A stretch of 40,900 nucleotides of DNA from sequence record NC_003214.2. One strand, written 5' to 3'. The notes under the pieces were generated by a model. It saw only the letters and a program-made list of their open reading frames with translations, was not told the origin of the DNA and did not search any database. Within the stretch, counting starts at the first letter, position 1. Each line of letters opens with the position of its first letter. Made by a program: the position numbers and the translations under genes. Positions 5,885 through 10,014 of the stretch are shown in pieces.

Positions 5885-5900
5885 GATATTTAAATTTTTC
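5885..5900 (-). promoter_or_regulatory. Early-type promoter (BRE-TATA) GAAAAATTTAAATATC
   Basis: Motif repeated upstream of nearly every gene in 5.9-9.5 kb. Confidence 0.85.
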
Positions 5901-5980
5901 TGTATGCGTTAGTTGTCTTCAGTAATGAGTTTCATGAGAAGAAAATTAAAAAAAAATACTGATAAAAAAAGGAAAGTAAA

Positions 5981-6133
5981 TTATTTTTCTCTTCTCTGTA
6001 GATATTCTTCTAGTGCTTCACGTATTACATCTTGTATTTTTTTATCATTTTGTGCACAATAAATTTTTAGTCTTGTTTTTAAGCTTTTCGGGATTGTAAT
6101 TCCAAATGATACTTTTTCTTCTTGTTCTGTCAT
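5981..6133 (-). CDS. Ribbon-helix-helix (CopG-like) regulator, 50 aa, not in the ORF track
   Basis: MTEQEEKVSFGITIPKSLKTRLKIYCAQNDKKIQDVIREALEEYLQRREK; AGGTGA SD; own promoter at 6165-6182. Confidence 0.9.
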   Translation of the reverse strand: MTEQEEKVSFGITIPKSLKTRLKIYCAQNDKKIQDVIREALEEYLQRREK

Positions 6134-6164
6134 TTTTTCACCTAAATATAATTTAGAATTAGCG

Positions 6165-6182
6165 GATATTTAAAACTTTTTC
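6165..6182 (-). promoter_or_regulatory. Early-type promoter GAAAAAGTTTTAAATATC
   Basis: Repeated motif ~32 nt upstream of ATG 6133. Confidence 0.8.
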
Positions 6183-6222
6183 TGAAAAGAAGTTTAGAAG
6201 AAAGGAGGATAAAAAAAGAGAT

Positions 6223-6561
6223 TCACTTTTTCTTTTCTCTCCATCCTTGAACTTCATAAATATATATTTTGTTGTCTTCTTTCCTATAAGTGAACTCTAG
6301 TTTGTACATGATATCATCGTCTTCATCGTATGTATATTGGTCTATTGTTATTCCATTACTAGATACACTGTTACTTGAATCATAGTTTCCGAGCAATTCC
6401 CTATATTCTTCTTCTGTCACCTTAAGTGGATCTTTGAATTTTATTTTGAACTCACTTACTTTTTCCATAAATAAGAAATCCAAGGCATCATCTAGATCAT
6501 CTGCTTCTGTCCAATCGTTTATTATATCTGATTCAATTTTTTCTAAATCTTGTTTTTCCAT
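6223..6561 (-). CDS. acrID1: DUF1374 / AcrID1-family anti-CRISPR protein (112 aa; SIFV ORF14-like)
   Basis: Very acidic; SEFKIKFKDPLKVTEEEYRELL and YKLEFTYRKEDNKIYIYEVQGWREK match the recalled AcrID1 pattern. Activity of this particular homolog is not shown. Confidence 0.75.
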   Translation of the reverse strand: MEKQDLEKIESDIINDWTEADDLDDALDFLFMEKVSEFKIKFKDPLKVTEEEYRELLGNYDSSNSVSSNGITIDQYTYDEDDDIMYKLEFTYRKEDNKIYIYEVQGWREKKK

Positions 6562-6594
6562 TTTAATTTCCCTAACATAATGTTCTTCTACTCT

Positions 6595-6612
6595 ATTATT
6601 TAAATCTTTTTC
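6595..6612 (-). promoter_or_regulatory. Early-type promoter GAAAAAGATTTAAATAAT
   Basis: Repeated motif upstream of 6561. Confidence 0.8.
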
Positions 6613-6652
6613 TTGATTTCTAGATTCTTAGATATAAGAGCAGAAGTTCATC

Positions 6653-6666
6653 GGAAAATTTAAATA
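6653..6666 (+). promoter_or_regulatory. Early-type promoter GGAAAATTTAAATA
   Basis: Repeated motif upstream of 6697. Confidence 0.8.
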
Positions 6667-6696
6667 TATGTTTTACGTATGTAGTAATGATCAAAA

Positions 6697-6996
6697 ATGG
6701 TTGATGTGGAAACAGTCGAGACAAAATATAAGATCATTTTGGATACACAAAGTAATTATGTATTAATGGAAGGGAGGCTGAAGGTAGAGGTGCGGATTAA
6801 AGGAAAACCTATAATATATGAGGTTCAGGAAGTGAGAAATATGGGGTATCTAATCGATATCACTGAACTTGATATTGCAGATACAAAACAACGTATTGAT
6901 AGTAAACTTTGTGAGAGACGTTATAAATATGTTAATAGCTTAAAAAATTTAGAAAAATTTATTAATTTTGTAGGAGCAGAAATAGAAGTTAAGTAA
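6697..6996 (+). CDS. MV(E/D)V...IEV family paralog 1 (99 aa)
   Basis: Aligns with 8273-8584 and 9149-9436; own promoter and T-tract terminator. Confidence 0.9.
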   Translation: MVDVETVETKYKIILDTQSNYVLMEGRLKVEVRIKGKPIIYEVQEVRNMGYLIDITELDIADTKQRIDSKLCERRYKYVNSLKNLEKFINFVGAEIEVK

Positions 6997-7120
6997 TTCA
7001 ATTTATTTTTTTTATGTTTTTCTATTTCTTATTTTTCTCATTTTCGTTATGATGTTTCTTTCTTTAAAATAGTTTCGTTGACTTTTTTAATATCGAGAAA
7101 TCGAGACAAAGAAGTATATC

Positions 7121-7134
7121 GAAAAATTTAAATA
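7121..7134 (+). promoter_or_regulatory. Early-type promoter GAAAAATTTAAATA
   Basis: Repeated motif; ATG 7158 lies 24 nt after the TATA. Confidence 0.85.
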
Positions 7135-7157
7135 CCCGTTTTATGTATATATTCTTG

Positions 7158-7895
7158 ATGTATGGGTTAGAAGTTAAACAACTCAAATTACTTTATAATT
7201 TACCTAAAGTTTTTTTAACACCAAATCTAAATAAATTTTCTATCACAAGAAATTATGTGGATTGTGCCTATTATGAGTCAAGAAGTGGGCTAACTAGAGA
7301 GGGCTGTATTATATTCGATGGTAATGTTCACAGAACACGTGGAATATATTATATTCCTGTACCGTCTGCTGTGGAACTATCATATAGAAGGAAAATGATA
7401 AAGGATGAACAAGATGTCAAGCAGATAATAGAGAAAATTAATCTTTATGGTGCTACTCTAAATACTAATAAGTTGTTAGTAAAGTGGAATAATTATGAAA
7501 TAATTCTATATGATCGGTTCATTAAAGGAGGAATGTATGAGTTTCCTTTACTGTTTAGTCAAGGACATCTATATGTTTACAACATCCCTAGGGTGAGGGA
7601 GGCATATAGGATTATCTATGAAAACGATAACCAAAAGGAGGAAATTGATAGTGAGATGTTTGAAGAGATTAACGAATTTAGCGTATACAATCATGCTATC
7701 AAGTTTGATAAGAAAGTGCTGAAATTAAAAGAATTGTATGTTTCACCTGGTCAAGGAGTAGTCATATACACACTAGATGACGTTACACTTGTTTCAGAGT
7801 CACCAGACCATAATAAAATTGAGAAATTTGTGTATAAGAATTCGTGGATACTGTTTTCACATCGTGCCCCACGTAACCAAGATCAAAGAGATTAA
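7158..7895 (+). CDS. Hypothetical protein (245 aa; leaderless start 7158 preferred over 7143), C-terminal SPDH...LFSH motif
   Basis: Long ORF; ATG 7143 is too close to the TATA. Confidence 0.9.
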   Translation: MYGLEVKQLKLLYNLPKVFLTPNLNKFSITRNYVDCAYYESRSGLTREGCIIFDGNVHRTRGIYYIPVPSAVELSYRRKMIKDEQDVKQIIEKINLYGATLNTNKLLVKWNNYEIILYDRFIKGGMYEFPLLFSQGHLYVYNIPRVREAYRIIYENDNQKEEIDSEMFEEINEFSVYNHAIKFDKKVLKLKELYVSPGQGVVIYTLDDVTLVSESPDHNKIEKFVYKNSWILFSHRAPRNQDQRD

Positions 7896-7946
7896 CATTT
7901 TTTTATGATTCTTCTTAATCGAGAAAAATGTTTCTAGAGATTTGTC

Positions 7947-7960
7947 GAAAAATTTAAATA
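7947..7960 (+). promoter_or_regulatory. Early-type promoter GAAAAATTTAAATA
   Basis: Identical to 7121-7134; ATG 7981 lies 21 nt downstream. Confidence 0.85.
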
Positions 7961-7980
7961 TTTATTTTGCGTATTTTTAA

Positions 7981-8211
7981 ATGATAAACATGGGTGGGAA
8001 AACATTAATTATAAATTGGGAAAACCCGTTAAATAGAGATGCATACACGGAAATAGGAAAATTGATGGTGTTAGTTTTGCCGTATGTAGTTAATATTGAG
8101 ATTGTAGATACTGAAGGTTGTATAATGGAAATAGATGATACAATAGAAGATGAGATAAAGGAGTTAAGTAGATTCTTAAAGTATGTTGAAGTGTCTTTTG
8201 CAGAAGAATAA
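7981..8211 (+). CDS. Small acidic hypothetical protein (76 aa), anti-defence candidate
   Basis: Own early promoter; acidic. Confidence 0.85.
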   Translation: MINMGGKTLIINWENPLNRDAYTEIGKLMVLVLPYVVNIEIVDTEGCIMEIDDTIEDEIKELSRFLKYVEVSFAEE

Positions 8212-8272
8212 AAAATAAGCTATCCAATTTTTTTATAATATAAAAAGAGAAAAATAAAAAAAATAAATTAAC

Positions 8273-8584
8273 TTAGTTAACTTCTATTTCGGCACCTATC
8301 ATTTCCGCTATTTTTTCGAGTGTCTTTAACACATTCACGTATCTCTCAAATCTTTTATTTAGAGTTTCGTCAATATCTCCTTTAACATCTGTCACTTCAT
8401 TCTGTATCTCATTCTCTGTAATAGTTTGCATATTTCCCATAAATTTTTCTTGTTTGTCCCTGTATTTTATTTCACTCTCCTTAACAGTTATTATAGCTTC
8501 TATCGTTCCTTCAAGCGTTATACTATCGTCCCTTGTGTCGATAATCAATTTGTATTTTATTGTTTTTTGTTTCACTTCTACCAT
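8273..8584 (-). CDS. MV(E/D)V...IEV family paralog 2 (103 aa)
   Basis: KYKLIIDT...LEG...RYVNVLKTLEKI...GAEIEV shared with 6697-6996. Confidence 0.9.
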   Translation of the reverse strand: MVEVKQKTIKYKLIIDTRDDSITLEGTIEAIITVKESEIKYRDKQEKFMGNMQTITENEIQNEVTDVKGDIDETLNKRFERYVNVLKTLEKIAEMIGAEIEVN

Positions 8585-8612
8585 GTTTGGTCGATTGTAT
8601 ATTAGATAAAGA

Positions 8613-8628
8613 GATATTTAAAATTTTC
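8613..8628 (-). promoter_or_regulatory. Early-type promoter GAAAATTTTAAATATC
   Basis: Repeated motif upstream of 8584. Confidence 0.85.
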
Positions 8629-8727
8629 TGTGTCTTTCTCCTTATCGATTTTTCGTCCTAAAAATTCCATACGATAAAAATATTATCAGAAACATGAGAA
8701 CAATTAGAAATAAAAAAAAGGAGAAAA

Positions 8728-9012
8728 TTATTTTTCATAATTAGAATATATAAGATTTATAAGGGGTGATATCTCTTTTTCATGTTTTTTTAGTATGTCT
8801 AGGACATACCATTGATCATTATAGTCTTCAGGTTTTGCTATTATAAACAATTTTACTAATTTTTCCATAAATTGAATCCCTTTTATATGTCCAAATCTTT
8901 CATACCACCACTGTATGAATTCAACATTTTCTGTAGACATATAAAAAAATTTATCATTAATTTTAACATATTTTTCCCCAAATTCTATCTGTTCATTTAT
9001 CTGTTCATTCAT
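8728..9012 (-). CDS. Hypothetical protein (94 aa), anti-defence candidate
   Basis: Own promoter; GGGGA SD. Confidence 0.85.
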   Translation of the reverse strand: MNEQINEQIEFGEKYVKINDKFFYMSTENVEFIQWWYERFGHIKGIQFMEKLVKLFIIAKPEDYNDQWYVLDILKKHEKEISPLINLIYSNYEK

Positions 9013-9044
9013 ACTTCTATCCCCTAATTATCATTAGAAAAATA

Positions 9045-9060
9045 GATATTTAAAGATTTC
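9045..9060 (-). promoter_or_regulatory. Early-type promoter GAAATCTTTAAATATC
   Basis: 24-bp identity 9042-9065 = 9462-9485. Confidence 0.85.
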
Positions 9061-9148
9061 TCTATTTTTTGATTCATGAAAAAATGGATAACTTTCCAGA
9101 TAATATCCAAAACTTGAAAAAAATTACGAATAAAAAAAAGAAATTGGC

Positions 9149-9436
9149 TTAATCAACTTCTATTGTTAATCCTGATTTTTCTAATTCATTCAGACCTTCT
9201 TTTATTTCGTCAATTCTTTTGTCTAGTTCTTCAACAATTCTATTTATCATGTTTTTTACCTGGTCTGTTTTTATTGTTTCCACGAATCCTATTTCTTTTA
9301 TTGATGAAACAGCGTATGGCATTTCACTGTCTTTTACGTTAAAGATTACTTTTGTTTCACAGTCAAGACTTACAATACCATTTACGGAATTTATTTTTAT
9401 CTTGCATTCGATTTGTTTCTTTACTACTTCAACCAT
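9149..9436 (-). CDS. MV(E/D)V...IEV family paralog 3 (95 aa)
   Basis: Same N-terminus, beta-strand pattern, C-terminal helix and terminal IEV as the other two. Confidence 0.88.
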   Translation of the reverse strand: MVEVVKKQIECKIKINSVNGIVSLDCETKVIFNVKDSEMPYAVSSIKEIGFVETIKTDQVKNMINRIVEELDKRIDEIKEGLNELEKSGLTIEVD

Positions 9437-9464
9437 TTTTGGTCATTAATACATTAGACACATA

Positions 9465-9480
9465 GATATTTAAAGATTTC
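9465..9480 (-). promoter_or_regulatory. Early-type promoter GAAATCTTTAAATATC
   Basis: Duplicate of 9045-9060. Confidence 0.85.
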
Positions 9481-10014
9481 TCTATCTTTCTTTTTATCGA
9501 ATTTTCGTTTTCAATTATGTGGAAGGAGTTGGAATATTATTTCAAAATCGAAAACAAGTTTGAGTACTAATTTATCTACTTTTTTTTCTGTATTTTGAGA
9601 GATATAAATTCAATCCCGGCTGCAGAACAATTTTTGTATCTTATTGTATTTTTATCTGTTTTTTTGTTTGAATACTAATTTGTTCACTTAATTTAAGGAA
9701 ACAAAAAAGAATTCAAACAAAAAATCTATTGTTTCAAATATTATTTTAATGACTTTATAATTTATACGTAAAAATAATCAGAGTGTAACGTAATGAATTG
9801 GATAAATTTCTTTTAAAAGAGTTTTCTGATTTGGGCTAACCCAAACGATTAAAGTTTTTTCTTTAAAAATGATTTTACGCCGTTATTTTCCCTAATTTTA
9901 AGGAGAGTTAAGGGCAAAAGTGGAAAATTTTAGGTTTAAAAACTTTTCTAGTAAAATAACGAGTGTGGTTAAAAAAGATTTTTGTATCCAGAGTGAAACT
10001 AATACTATCTTCTT

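What the first reader, a model, noticed from the sequence alone, without database searches (positions are those of the whole stretch)
6697..9436. Triplicated, highly diverged MV(E/D)V...IEV protein family
Seen: 6697-6996, 8273-8584 and 9149-9436 share the N-terminus (MVDVE/MVEVK/MVEVV), a long beta pattern (KYKIILD/KYKLIID/ECKIKIN), a long C-terminal helix and the ending (GAEIEVK/GAEIEVN/GLTIEVD), plus related 5' leaders, yet differ widely inside. Inference: a diversifying arms-race family, e.g. allele-specific inhibitors of one host complex, or a hetero-oligomer. I cannot assign it to a characterised Acr from memory.
Basis: partly seen in the sequence, partly recalled or inferred. Interest (0 to 1): 0.68.

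Follow-up and report, generated by a model that had tools for sequence, protein, structure and literature searches.

The report
Known anti-CRISPR gene family in SIFV
The three small look-alike genes are real paralogues in the archaeal virus SIFV, but they belong to a family published in 2024 (ADG.56) whose closest relative, in the sister virus SIFV2, was shown by experiment to block the host's type I-A CRISPR immunity, so the finding is correct but not new.

Summary
The window is the complete genome of Sulfolobus islandicus filamentous virus (SIFV, AF440571.2). The three ORFs are SIFV0015 (6697-6996 +), SIFV0018 (8273-8584 -) and SIFV0020 (9149-9436 -).

**Observation: confirmed.**
- They are true paralogues: BLASTP E 4e-19 and 6e-9, one shared PHROG, and the same confident predicted fold of three long beta strands plus one long C-terminal helix.
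- Each has its own near-identical BRE/TATA promoter exactly 30 nt before the ATG, and a shared T8 terminator.

**Interpretation: essentially right, but already published.**
- Bhoobalan-Chitty et al. 2024 (PMC11065993) list these three genes with SIFV2 gp15 and gp17 as family ADG.56.
- That paper showed in vivo that SIFV2 gp15, the positional orthologue of SIFV gp18 (55% identity), inhibits subtype I-A CRISPR-Cas. Its mechanism is still unknown.
- The genes lie in the SIFV early-promoter anti-defence island, next to AcrID1 (gp14) and AcrIIIB1 (gp16) homologues.

**Small additions here.**
- There are two subfamilies and four further metagenomic members.
- Between SIFV and SIFV2 the two shared cassettes, gp18 and gp20, are 64-67% identical in DNA while the genes next to them are 96-99% identical. 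Hot-spring contigs break at the same ORF borders. This fits cassette exchange by recombination.

The parts
6653..6667 (+). BRE/TATA early-type promoter of SIFV0015 (gp15). It ends 30 nt before the ATG.
   Evidence: Motif scan: 11 hits in the genome against 3.85 expected, 9 of them between 5886 and 9480. Upstream alignment A2.
6697..6996 (+). SIFV0015 (gp15), 99 aa. The most divergent ADG.56 paralogue, pI 6.3. SIFV2 has no copy at this position.
7006..7013 (+). T8 tract in the conserved 3' flank of gp15, a likely archaeal T-rich terminator.
   Evidence: Alignment A5 of the 3' flanks; sequence.
8614..8628 (-). BRE/TATA early-type promoter of SIFV0018 (gp18), an exact match to the motif, 30 nt before the ATG.
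8273..8584 (-). SIFV0018 (gp18), 103 aa, pI 4.8. ADG.56 subfamily A. Positional orthologue of SIFV2 gp15, the tested AcrIA, at 55% identity.
8256..8263 (-). T8 tract in the conserved 3' flank of gp18.
   Evidence: sequence.
9466..9480 (-). BRE/TATA early-type promoter of SIFV0020 (gp20), an exact match, 30 nt before the ATG. Nearly identical to the gp19 promoter at 9046-9060.
9149..9436 (-). SIFV0020 (gp20), 95 aa, pI 4.8. ADG.56 subfamily B. Orthologue of SIFV2 gp17 at 58% identity.
9132..9139 (-). T8 tract in the conserved 3' flank of gp20.
   Evidence: sequence.
6223..6561 (-). Context: SIFV0014 (gp14), DUF1374, a member of the AcrID1 family with its own crystal structure (2H36).
   Evidence: Pfam PF07118 at 5.8e-36. 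PDB 2H36 is the protein itself; it also hits 3DF6/3DJW and the SIRV3 AcrID1 entry 6EXP at E 7e-4. Paper supplement.
7143..7895 (+). Context: SIFV0016 (gp16), listed in the paper as an AcrIIIB1-family homologue.
   Evidence: Paper supplement; phrog_6092.
7981..8211 (+). Context: SIFV0017 (gp17), ADG.58, 97% identical to SIFV2 gp14.
8728..9012 (-). Context: SIFV0019 (gp19), ADG.57, 97% identical to SIFV2 gp16.

Best explanation
SIFV0015, SIFV0018 and SIFV0020 are three diverged paralogues of the published anti-defence family ADG.56.

Anatomy. Each is a self-contained cassette: a strong BRE/TATA promoter of the virus's early or anti-defence type, a leader of about 8 nt, an ORF of 95-103 codons, and a T8 terminator. 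The product is a small, mostly acidic two-layer protein, with a three-stranded antiparallel sheet packed against one long C-terminal helix.

Context. The genes sit in the SIFV anti-defence island, about 5.7-9.5 kb, beside AcrID1-family and AcrIIIB1-family genes.

Function. [quoted passage not shown] It is probably made immediately after infection.

Mechanism (inferred, not shown). gp18 most likely acts as a stoichiometric protein binder of a component of the I-A interference machinery, not as a DNA-binding repressor.

The other two copies (inferred, not shown). gp20 (subfamily B) and the divergent gp15 probably have a diverged specificity: another allele of the same target, or another defence.

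Evolution. The gp18 and gp20 cassettes, the two that SIFV and SIFV2 share, look like old alleles moved among related viruses by recombination in the conserved flanks.
For: Identity of the window and genes.

Paralogy.

Family assignment and experiment:
- Supplementary Data 1 of PMC11065993 lists the three genes as ADG.56 'ADG/Acr'.
- SIFV2 gp15 restored the delta-gp45-47 SIRV2 mutant by about 4 logs but did not restore the double mutant that also lacks acrIIIB1.
- P0005 from my exhaustive search is identical to SIFV2 gp15.

Orthology:
- gp18 vs SIFV2 gp15: 55%, E 3e-34, at the same position between gp17-like and gp19-like genes.
- gp20 vs SIFV2 gp17: 58%.
- In the tree, subfamily B has 93/99 support.

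Promoters: 9 of 11 motif hits cluster in 5886-9480, and 0 of 100 shuffles reach 11 hits. The paper ties this promoter type to immediate-early Acr genes in SIRV2.

Neighbours: gp14 is AcrID1 family and gp16 is AcrIIIB1 family.

Fold: pLDDT 93 for both gp15 and gp18.

Argument for a protein binder: pI 4.8-5.5 and net charge -3 to -7 in all members except gp15, and no HTH or RHH family hit.

Cassette mosaic:
- Nucleotide identity falls from 0.95-1.0 to 0.5-0.7 within about 60 nt of the ORF borders.
- dS is 0.02-0.05 for gp17 and gp19, but saturated for the ADG.56 pairs.
- Hot-spring metagenome contigs match the flanks and break at 8293/4 to 8486-8612 and at 9123-9187 to 9462-9467.
Against: - No SIFV paralogue has been assayed.
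- gp18 is only 55% identical to the tested protein, and Acr specificity can change at that distance.
- SIFV2 gp17, the orthologue of gp20, showed no I-A inhibition in the weak-promoter screen.
- The tested virus kept gp48, which a later preprint says is itself a I-A inhibitor (AcrIIIB1/AcrIA4) that cooperates with the repressor AcrIA3. SIFV2 gp15 may therefore work only together with such a partner, or may act on Cascade up-regulation, not on the effector.
- The same preprint says the mechanism is unknown.
- No RNA data for SIFV were found, so early expression rests on the promoter type alone.
- dN/dS of about 0.23 does not show positive selection.
- Fold searches gave only background-level matches.
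Confidence: 0.75

Rival explanations
1. All three paralogues inhibit subtype I-A. They are either redundant, raising Acr dose early in infection, or tuned to different allelic variants of the same I-A target found in different S. islandicus strains.
For: All three are in one family with a I-A inhibitor. They share the same promoter type and the same fold. The host up-regulates Cascade about 40-fold on infection, which would reward a higher Acr dose or several inhibitors.
Against: SIFV2 gp17 (subfamily B) was negative in the I-A screen, though only under a weak promoter. The paralogues are 25-39% identical, which is far apart for mere dosage copies. SIFV2 manages with two copies, and the related contig L004 has one.
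Confidence: 0.25
2. The family acts at the level of regulation. It blocks the infection-induced derepression of the I-A interference operon, for instance by binding Csa3b or another host factor, and so takes the place of SIRV2 AcrIA3.
For: SIFV2 gp15 complemented a deletion (gp45-47) whose relevant gene was later reported to be gp47/AcrIA3, a repressor of Cascade transcription. It did so in a virus that still carried gp48/AcrIA4. The preprint itself expects AcrIIIB1/AcrIA4 homologues to be flanked by further I-A inhibitors, 'including transcriptional inhibitors', and cites SIFV and SIFV2.
Against: The proteins are acidic and show no HTH or RHH fold or family, so direct promoter binding like AcrIA3's is unlikely. 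An indirect route through a protein partner is not excluded.
Confidence: 0.15
3. gp15 and/or gp20 are not anti-CRISPRs. They would inhibit another host defence, such as a toxin-antitoxin or other system, or serve early host take-over.
For: The paper stresses that ADG families need not be Acrs, and it found an anti-TA protein among them. gp20's orthologue was negative for I-A. gp15 is the outlier: pI 6.3, absent from SIFV2, and without the upstream CGA-N5-TCGA box.
Against: Homology to a proven Acr and a place in the same island argue for a related function.
Confidence: 0.2
4. The paralogues form an obligate hetero-oligomer.
For: They share a fold and are co-expressed from like promoters.
Against: SIFV2 gp15 was active alone from a plasmid during infection by SIRV2, and tblastn of phage records found no family member outside SIFV and SIFV2. 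Copy number varies from one to three among related viruses.
Confidence: 0.05

Closest known systems
ADG.56 / AcrIA of SIFV2 (SIFV2 gp15, AOS58370.1; Bhoobalan-Chitty et al. 2024, PMC11065993)
   Same: Same protein family: gp18 55%, gp15 33% and gp20 33% identity. Same size and same island. gp18 and gp20 keep the same positions between the gp17-like, gp19-like and gp21-like genes. Same early BRE/TATA promoter type. The paper itself lists the three SIFV genes as members.
   Different: Only SIFV2 gp15 has been tested. SIFV carries three copies, SIFV2 two. The SIFV copies are strongly diverged from it, although the genes next to gp18 and gp20 are 96-99% identical in DNA.
AcrID1 family (SIRV3 gp02, PDB 6EXP; AFV1 ORF99, PDB 3DJW; SIFV gp14, PDB 2H36; Pfam DUF1374)
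   Same: Small (about 100 aa) alpha/beta proteins of rudiviruses and lipothrixviruses. They are multi-copy in some genomes, are driven by the same promoter type, and one member is the next-door neighbour gp14.
   Different: No sequence match: no DUF1374 hit for the three proteins and no 6EXP, 3DJW or 2H36 in the profile search of PDB sequences. None of these entries is among the listed structural matches either.
AcrIA3 (SIRV2 gp47) and AcrIIIB1/AcrIA4 (SIRV2 gp48)
   Same: Inhibitors of the same host system, subtype I-A. SIFV2 gp15 functionally replaces the gp45-47 deletion.
   Different: AcrIA3 is a winged-HTH repressor of the Cascade promoter. ADG.56 proteins are acidic beta3-alpha proteins with no HTH. 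The AcrIIIB1 family is represented in SIFV by the unrelated 250-aa gp16.
LptE-like and COMM-domain-like beta-sheet-plus-helix folds
   Same: Overall arrangement of an antiparallel sheet with a C-terminal helix. LptE: Z 7.8, rmsd 2.5 A over 86 residues. COMM: Foldseek E 5e-3.
   Different: The scores are at the level the tool itself calls background (best Z 7-8 is typical for models with no true match). Sequence identity is 8-17%, and the biology is unrelated. I treat this as a common arrangement, not as homology.

Membership tests
ADG.56 (AcrIA of SIFV2 gp15) | Significant sequence homology to SIFV2 gp15 over the full length | tested here: met
   BLASTP against SIFV2 gp15: gp18 55%, E 3e-34; gp15 33%, E 5e-16; gp20 33%, E 1e-14. 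A family HMM recovers all members at E below 1e-30.
ADG.56 (AcrIA of SIFV2 gp15) | Single gene preceded by the virus's consensus regulatory sequence with a strong BRE/TATA promoter (the paper's criterion for an ADG) | tested here: met
   GAAAnnTTTAAATAT lies 30 nt upstream of each ATG. Hits cluster in 5886-9480: 11 found against 3.85 expected.
ADG.56 (AcrIA of SIFV2 gp15) | Listed as members by the authors who defined the family | tested here: met
   Supplementary file 3 of PMC11065993 lists SIFV0015, SIFV0018 and SIFV0020 as ADG.56, 'ADG/Acr'.
ADG.56 (AcrIA of SIFV2 gp15) | [quoted passage not shown] | not testable with these tools
   Shown only for SIFV2 gp15. SIFV2 gp17 was negative in the weak-promoter screen. 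The SIFV proteins are untested.
ADG.56 (AcrIA of SIFV2 gp15) | Immediate-early transcription | not testable with these tools
   No RNA run holds the stretch. Early expression is inferred from the promoter type only.
AcrID1 (DUF1374) | Match to Pfam PF07118 or to the solved members 6EXP, 3DJW or 2H36 | tested here: not met
   No DUF1374 hit for the three proteins, whereas the neighbour gp14 hits at 5.8e-36. None of the AcrID1 entries appears in the PDB sequence search or among the listed fold matches.
COMM domain / LptE fold | Structural match clearly above background, with supporting sequence signal | tested here: not met
   Best Z 7.8 and TM 0.3-0.6. The tool states that Z 7-8 is typical for models without a real match.

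The most novel reading that the evidence does not exclude
The ADG.56 genes are interchangeable specificity cassettes, not redundant copies. On this reading, old and deeply diverged alleles are kept in the population by selection from varying host defences: subfamily A aimed at subtype I-A, subfamily B and the gp15 type at another target or another I-A variant. The cassettes would move between co-circulating betalipothrixviruses by recombination in the conserved promoter and terminator flanks. That would make this a small modular 'anti-defence shuffling' locus.
Probability: 0.35. Interest if true: 0.5.

Novelty: already known. Interest (0 to 1): 0.2.

Why it matters
Subtype I-A is the most common CRISPR type in Sulfolobales, and its first interference inhibitor (SIFV2 gp15) was reported only in 2024 with no known mechanism. 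The three SIFV paralogues are a ready natural panel of variants, 25-55% identical on one confidently predicted scaffold. They could be used to map which surface carries the activity and whether specificity differs between subfamilies.

The sharp contrast between near-identical flanks and deeply diverged ORFs is a tidy example of how archaeal viruses may exchange anti-defence cassettes.

As a scan result, however, this is a rediscovery: the paralogy is annotated in GenBank (KX467643) and the family and its function are published.

Tried and rejected
**Searches for more relatives**
- The word-index protein search with the three-sequence profile returned only the window's own proteins.
- The IMG/VR scan found no relative.
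Absence from cellular genomes therefore rests on the exhaustive HMM search alone.
- That search also returned a 4071-aa protein at E 1.8e-33. It is an RTX/DUF5801 repeat adhesin that scores through 17 weak repeats. I rejected it as a repeat artefact.
- tblastn of phage records found the family only in SIFV and SIFV2. Its rows for Flavobacterium phages (E 0.2) are noise.

**Family and fold assignment**
- Pfam gave only sub-threshold hits (Glyco_hydro_10, RabGAP-TBC, Mu Gam, DUF2250), all below the gathering scores. Rejected.
- The PDB sequence profile search found nothing below E 0.25.
- Fold searches in PDB (Foldseek and VIA-align wide) and in the ESM Atlas gave only background-level matches: LptE, COMM, hibernation factor.
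- The BFVD match to a 116-aa protein of Sulfolobales Beppu filamentous virus 3 (TM 0.63/0.55, E 5e-4) could not be backed by sequence. It remains a lead only.

**Complex prediction**
- A homodimer prediction for gp18 returned 'no answer', score 0.00. This is no evidence either way.
- I did not try complexes with I-A Cas proteins. Only one job was allowed and the target is unknown.

**Expression**
- No RNA-seq run holding SIFV was found, so timing of expression could not be checked.
- The sigma-70 promoter scan does not apply to an archaeal virus and I ignored it.

**Selection**
- A crude NG86 dN/dS gave no value above 1.
Full report
**Identity of the window.** A megablast of 6000-10000 matches AF440571.2 / NC_003214.2, Sulfolobus islandicus filamentous virus (SIFV, Betalipothrixvirus), at 100% over the same coordinates. 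The record is 40,900 bp, the length of the window. The three ORFs of the finding are annotated there as hypothetical proteins SIFV0015 (6697-6996 +, 99 aa), SIFV0018 (8273-8584 -, 103 aa) and SIFV0020 (9149-9436 -, 95 aa).

- gp15 and gp18 are 39% identical (E 4e-19). gp18 and gp20 are 32% identical (E 6e-9).
- gp15 and gp20 give no BLASTP alignment. They are joined through gp18, through one PHROG family (phrog_18494, E about 1e-40 for each), and by structure.
- My AlphaFold2 model of gp15 has pLDDT 93.2, with strands 3-16, 21-34 and 37-51 and a helix at 57-92. It superposes on the independent BFVD model of gp20 at TM 0.87/0.91, rmsd 1.8 A.
- gp18 gives the same architecture at pLDDT 93.3.
- The 'related leaders' are real too. 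A BRE/TATA element GAAAnnTTTAAATAT ends exactly 30 nt before each of the three ATGs. The 3' flanks share stop-N3-AATTT(A/C)-T8-AT.
- Each gene is thus a self-contained cassette of promoter, short leader, ORF and T-rich terminator.

**What it is.** The SIFV2 record (KX467643) already names its gp15 a 'SIFV.gp15/gp18/gp20-like protein' and its gp17 a 'SIFV.gp20-like protein'.

Bhoobalan-Chitty et al. 2024 (Nat Commun, PMC11065993) searched archaeal virus genomes for single genes preceded by a virus-specific consensus regulatory sequence with a strong BRE/TATA promoter. This is the type that drives immediate-early Acr genes in SIRV2. Their Supplementary Data 1 lists SIFV0015, SIFV0018, SIFV0020, SIFV2 gp15 and SIFV2 gp17 as family ADG.56, 'ADG/Acr'.

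They screened six SIFV2 genes in S. islandicus LAL14/1 delta-cas6(I-D). [quoted passage not shown] It did not restore the mutant that also lacks acrIIIB1. They concluded that SIFV2 gp15 inhibits subtype I-A. Protein P0005 from my exhaustive search is identical to SIFV2 gp15.

**The surrounding island.** My motif scan found 11 sites in the genome, against 3.85 expected, and no shuffle reached 11. Nine of the sites lie between 5886 and 9480, in front of gp12, gp13, gp15, gp16, gp17, gp18, gp19 and gp20. The paper's supplement assigns the neighbours as follows:

| Gene | Assignment |
|---|---|
| gp12 | ADG.60 |
| gp13 | ADG.59, an RHH 'ADa' regulator |
| gp14 | AcrID1 family |
| gp16 | AcrIIIB1 family |
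| gp17 | ADG.58 |
| gp19 | ADG.57 |

I checked gp14 myself. It hits DUF1374 at 5.8e-36. It is PDB entry 2H36, and it matches AFV1 ORF99 and the SIRV3 AcrID1 entry 6EXP. The finding's genes therefore sit in the SIFV anti-defence island.

**Breadth of the family.** An exhaustive HMMER search of 1.84 billion representatives found the three query proteins plus five more true members of 95-99 aa, P0005 to P0009. One of these is SIFV2 gp15 and four come from metagenome assemblies. A sixth hit was a repeat-adhesin artefact.
- P0008 lies on an 11.8-kb SIFV-like contig, in the same island between the two helicase genes, as the only copy there.
- P0006 lies next to gp13-like and gp16-like genes.
- P0009, the most divergent, lies on a contig with no other SIFV-like gene.
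- In the tree, subfamily B (gp20, SIFV2 gp17, P0007, P0008) has 93/99 support. gp18, SIFV2 gp15 and P0006 sit close together, with gp15 and P0009 as long-branched outliers.
- All members are acidic (pI 4.8-5.5) except gp15 (pI 6.3).

**An addition: a mosaic of divergence.** Protein identity between SIFV and SIFV2 is 97% for gp17, gp19 and gp21. It is 55% for gp18 against SIFV2 gp15, and 58% for gp20 against SIFV2 gp17. Core genes such as gp11, gp22 and gp23 are 77-90%.

In 60-nt windows, nucleotide identity falls from 0.93-1.00 to 0.52-0.72 within about one window of the borders of ORFs 8273-8584 and 9149-9436, and recovers between them.

| Genes compared (SIFV vs SIFV2) | dS | dN |
|---|---|---|
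| gp17, gp19 | 0.02, 0.05 | 0.01, 0.01 |
| gp11, gp22, gp23 (core) | 0.64-0.98 | 0.07-0.11 |
| the two ADG.56 pairs | saturated | 0.29-0.32 |

The one computable dN/dS for an ADG.56 pair is about 0.23. Three tiers of divergence within 1.5 kb cannot come from point mutation on one lineage. They indicate recombination with breakpoints at the cassette borders.

Contigs from two hot-spring metagenome studies behave the same way. They match the flanks and break at 8293/8294 to 8486-8612 (in one case with 255 unlike letters in between) and at 9123-9187 to 9462-9467. Almost nothing is laid over the body of gp15. SIFV2 lacks gp14 and the gp15 copy altogether.

**How it most likely works.**

Shown by others: a subfamily-A member blocks I-A interference in vivo.

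Inferred here:
- gp18 does the same in SIFV.
- The proteins are made at once after entry. This rests on the promoter type only, because no RNA data were found.
- They act by binding a protein. They are acidic and have no HTH or RHH, unlike the winged-HTH repressor AcrIA3.

A caveat comes from a later preprint (10.1101/2024.04.02.587611). The tester virus still carried gp48, now called AcrIIIB1/AcrIA4, which cooperates with gp47/AcrIA3, a repressor that blocks Cascade up-regulation. The preprint states that the mechanism of the SIFV2 protein is still to be identified. A regulatory route, or dependence on an AcrIIIB1-type partner (gp16 in SIFV), therefore stays open. No later paper on it was found.

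**Comparison with known families.** The three genes meet every testable criterion of ADG.56. They are not AcrID1-family proteins. Structural matches to LptE, the COMM domain and ribosome hibernation factors are at the tool's stated background level. A homodimer prediction gave no answer.

**Verdict.** The family, its paralogy and its anti-CRISPR role were published in 2024, so novelty is 'already known' and interest is low. What remains open is the mechanism, the specificity of gp15 and gp20, and the cassette-exchange pattern described here.

Noticed in passing
window 7121-7160: The BRE/TATA of gp16 (7121-7135) ends only 8 nt before the annotated ATG at 7143. The in-frame ATG at 7158 lies 23 nt after the TATA. 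The real start of this AcrIIIB1-family gene may therefore be 7158, on a leaderless transcript, which would make the annotated N-terminus five residues too long.
   Followed up: partly
window 6687-6704 and 9429-9446: In gp15 and gp20, an out-of-frame ATG 10 nt upstream of the start opens a five-codon micro-ORF (MIKNG*/MTKNG*). Its stop overlaps codons 2-3 of the gene. gp18 has ATC at that place. The upstream ATG lies about 20 nt after the TATA, so it is near or before the expected transcription start. Part of the conserved MV(D/E) N-terminus may thus reflect constraint at the nucleotide level.
   Followed up: partly
window 7094-7104, 8652-8642 (-), 9504-9494 (-) approx.: A box CGA(A/G)AA(A/T)TCGA lies about 22 nt upstream of the TATA of gp16, gp18 and gp20, but not of gp15 (sequences). 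It could be an operator for a shared regulator such as the RHH protein gp13.
   Followed up: no
window 6000-10000, run X1: A run labelled 'mouse gut metagenome' holds short contigs that are 100% identical to SIFV. This is most likely cross-contamination or a mislabelled library, not a habitat signal.
   Followed up: no
window 9437-10014: A stretch of about 580 bp between gp20 and gp21 has no ORF of 60 aa or more. Against SIFV2 it carries an indel at about 9539-9658 and is otherwise 85-98% identical. Metagenome depth is highest here. Its function is unknown.
   Followed up: no
BFVD A0A3Q8Q403 (Sulfolobales Beppu filamentous virus 3, 116 aa): This is the third-best structural match to the gp15 model (TM 0.63/0.55, E 5e-4). 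It may be a distant ADG.56 relative in another lipothrixvirus. Sequence searches did not support the link.
   Followed up: partly
L005:395-694 (-): The most divergent family member, P0009, is flanked by a convergent gene of the same length (99 aa). That gene has no detectable similarity to the family or to any PHROG. The contig shares no other gene with SIFV.
   Followed up: partly
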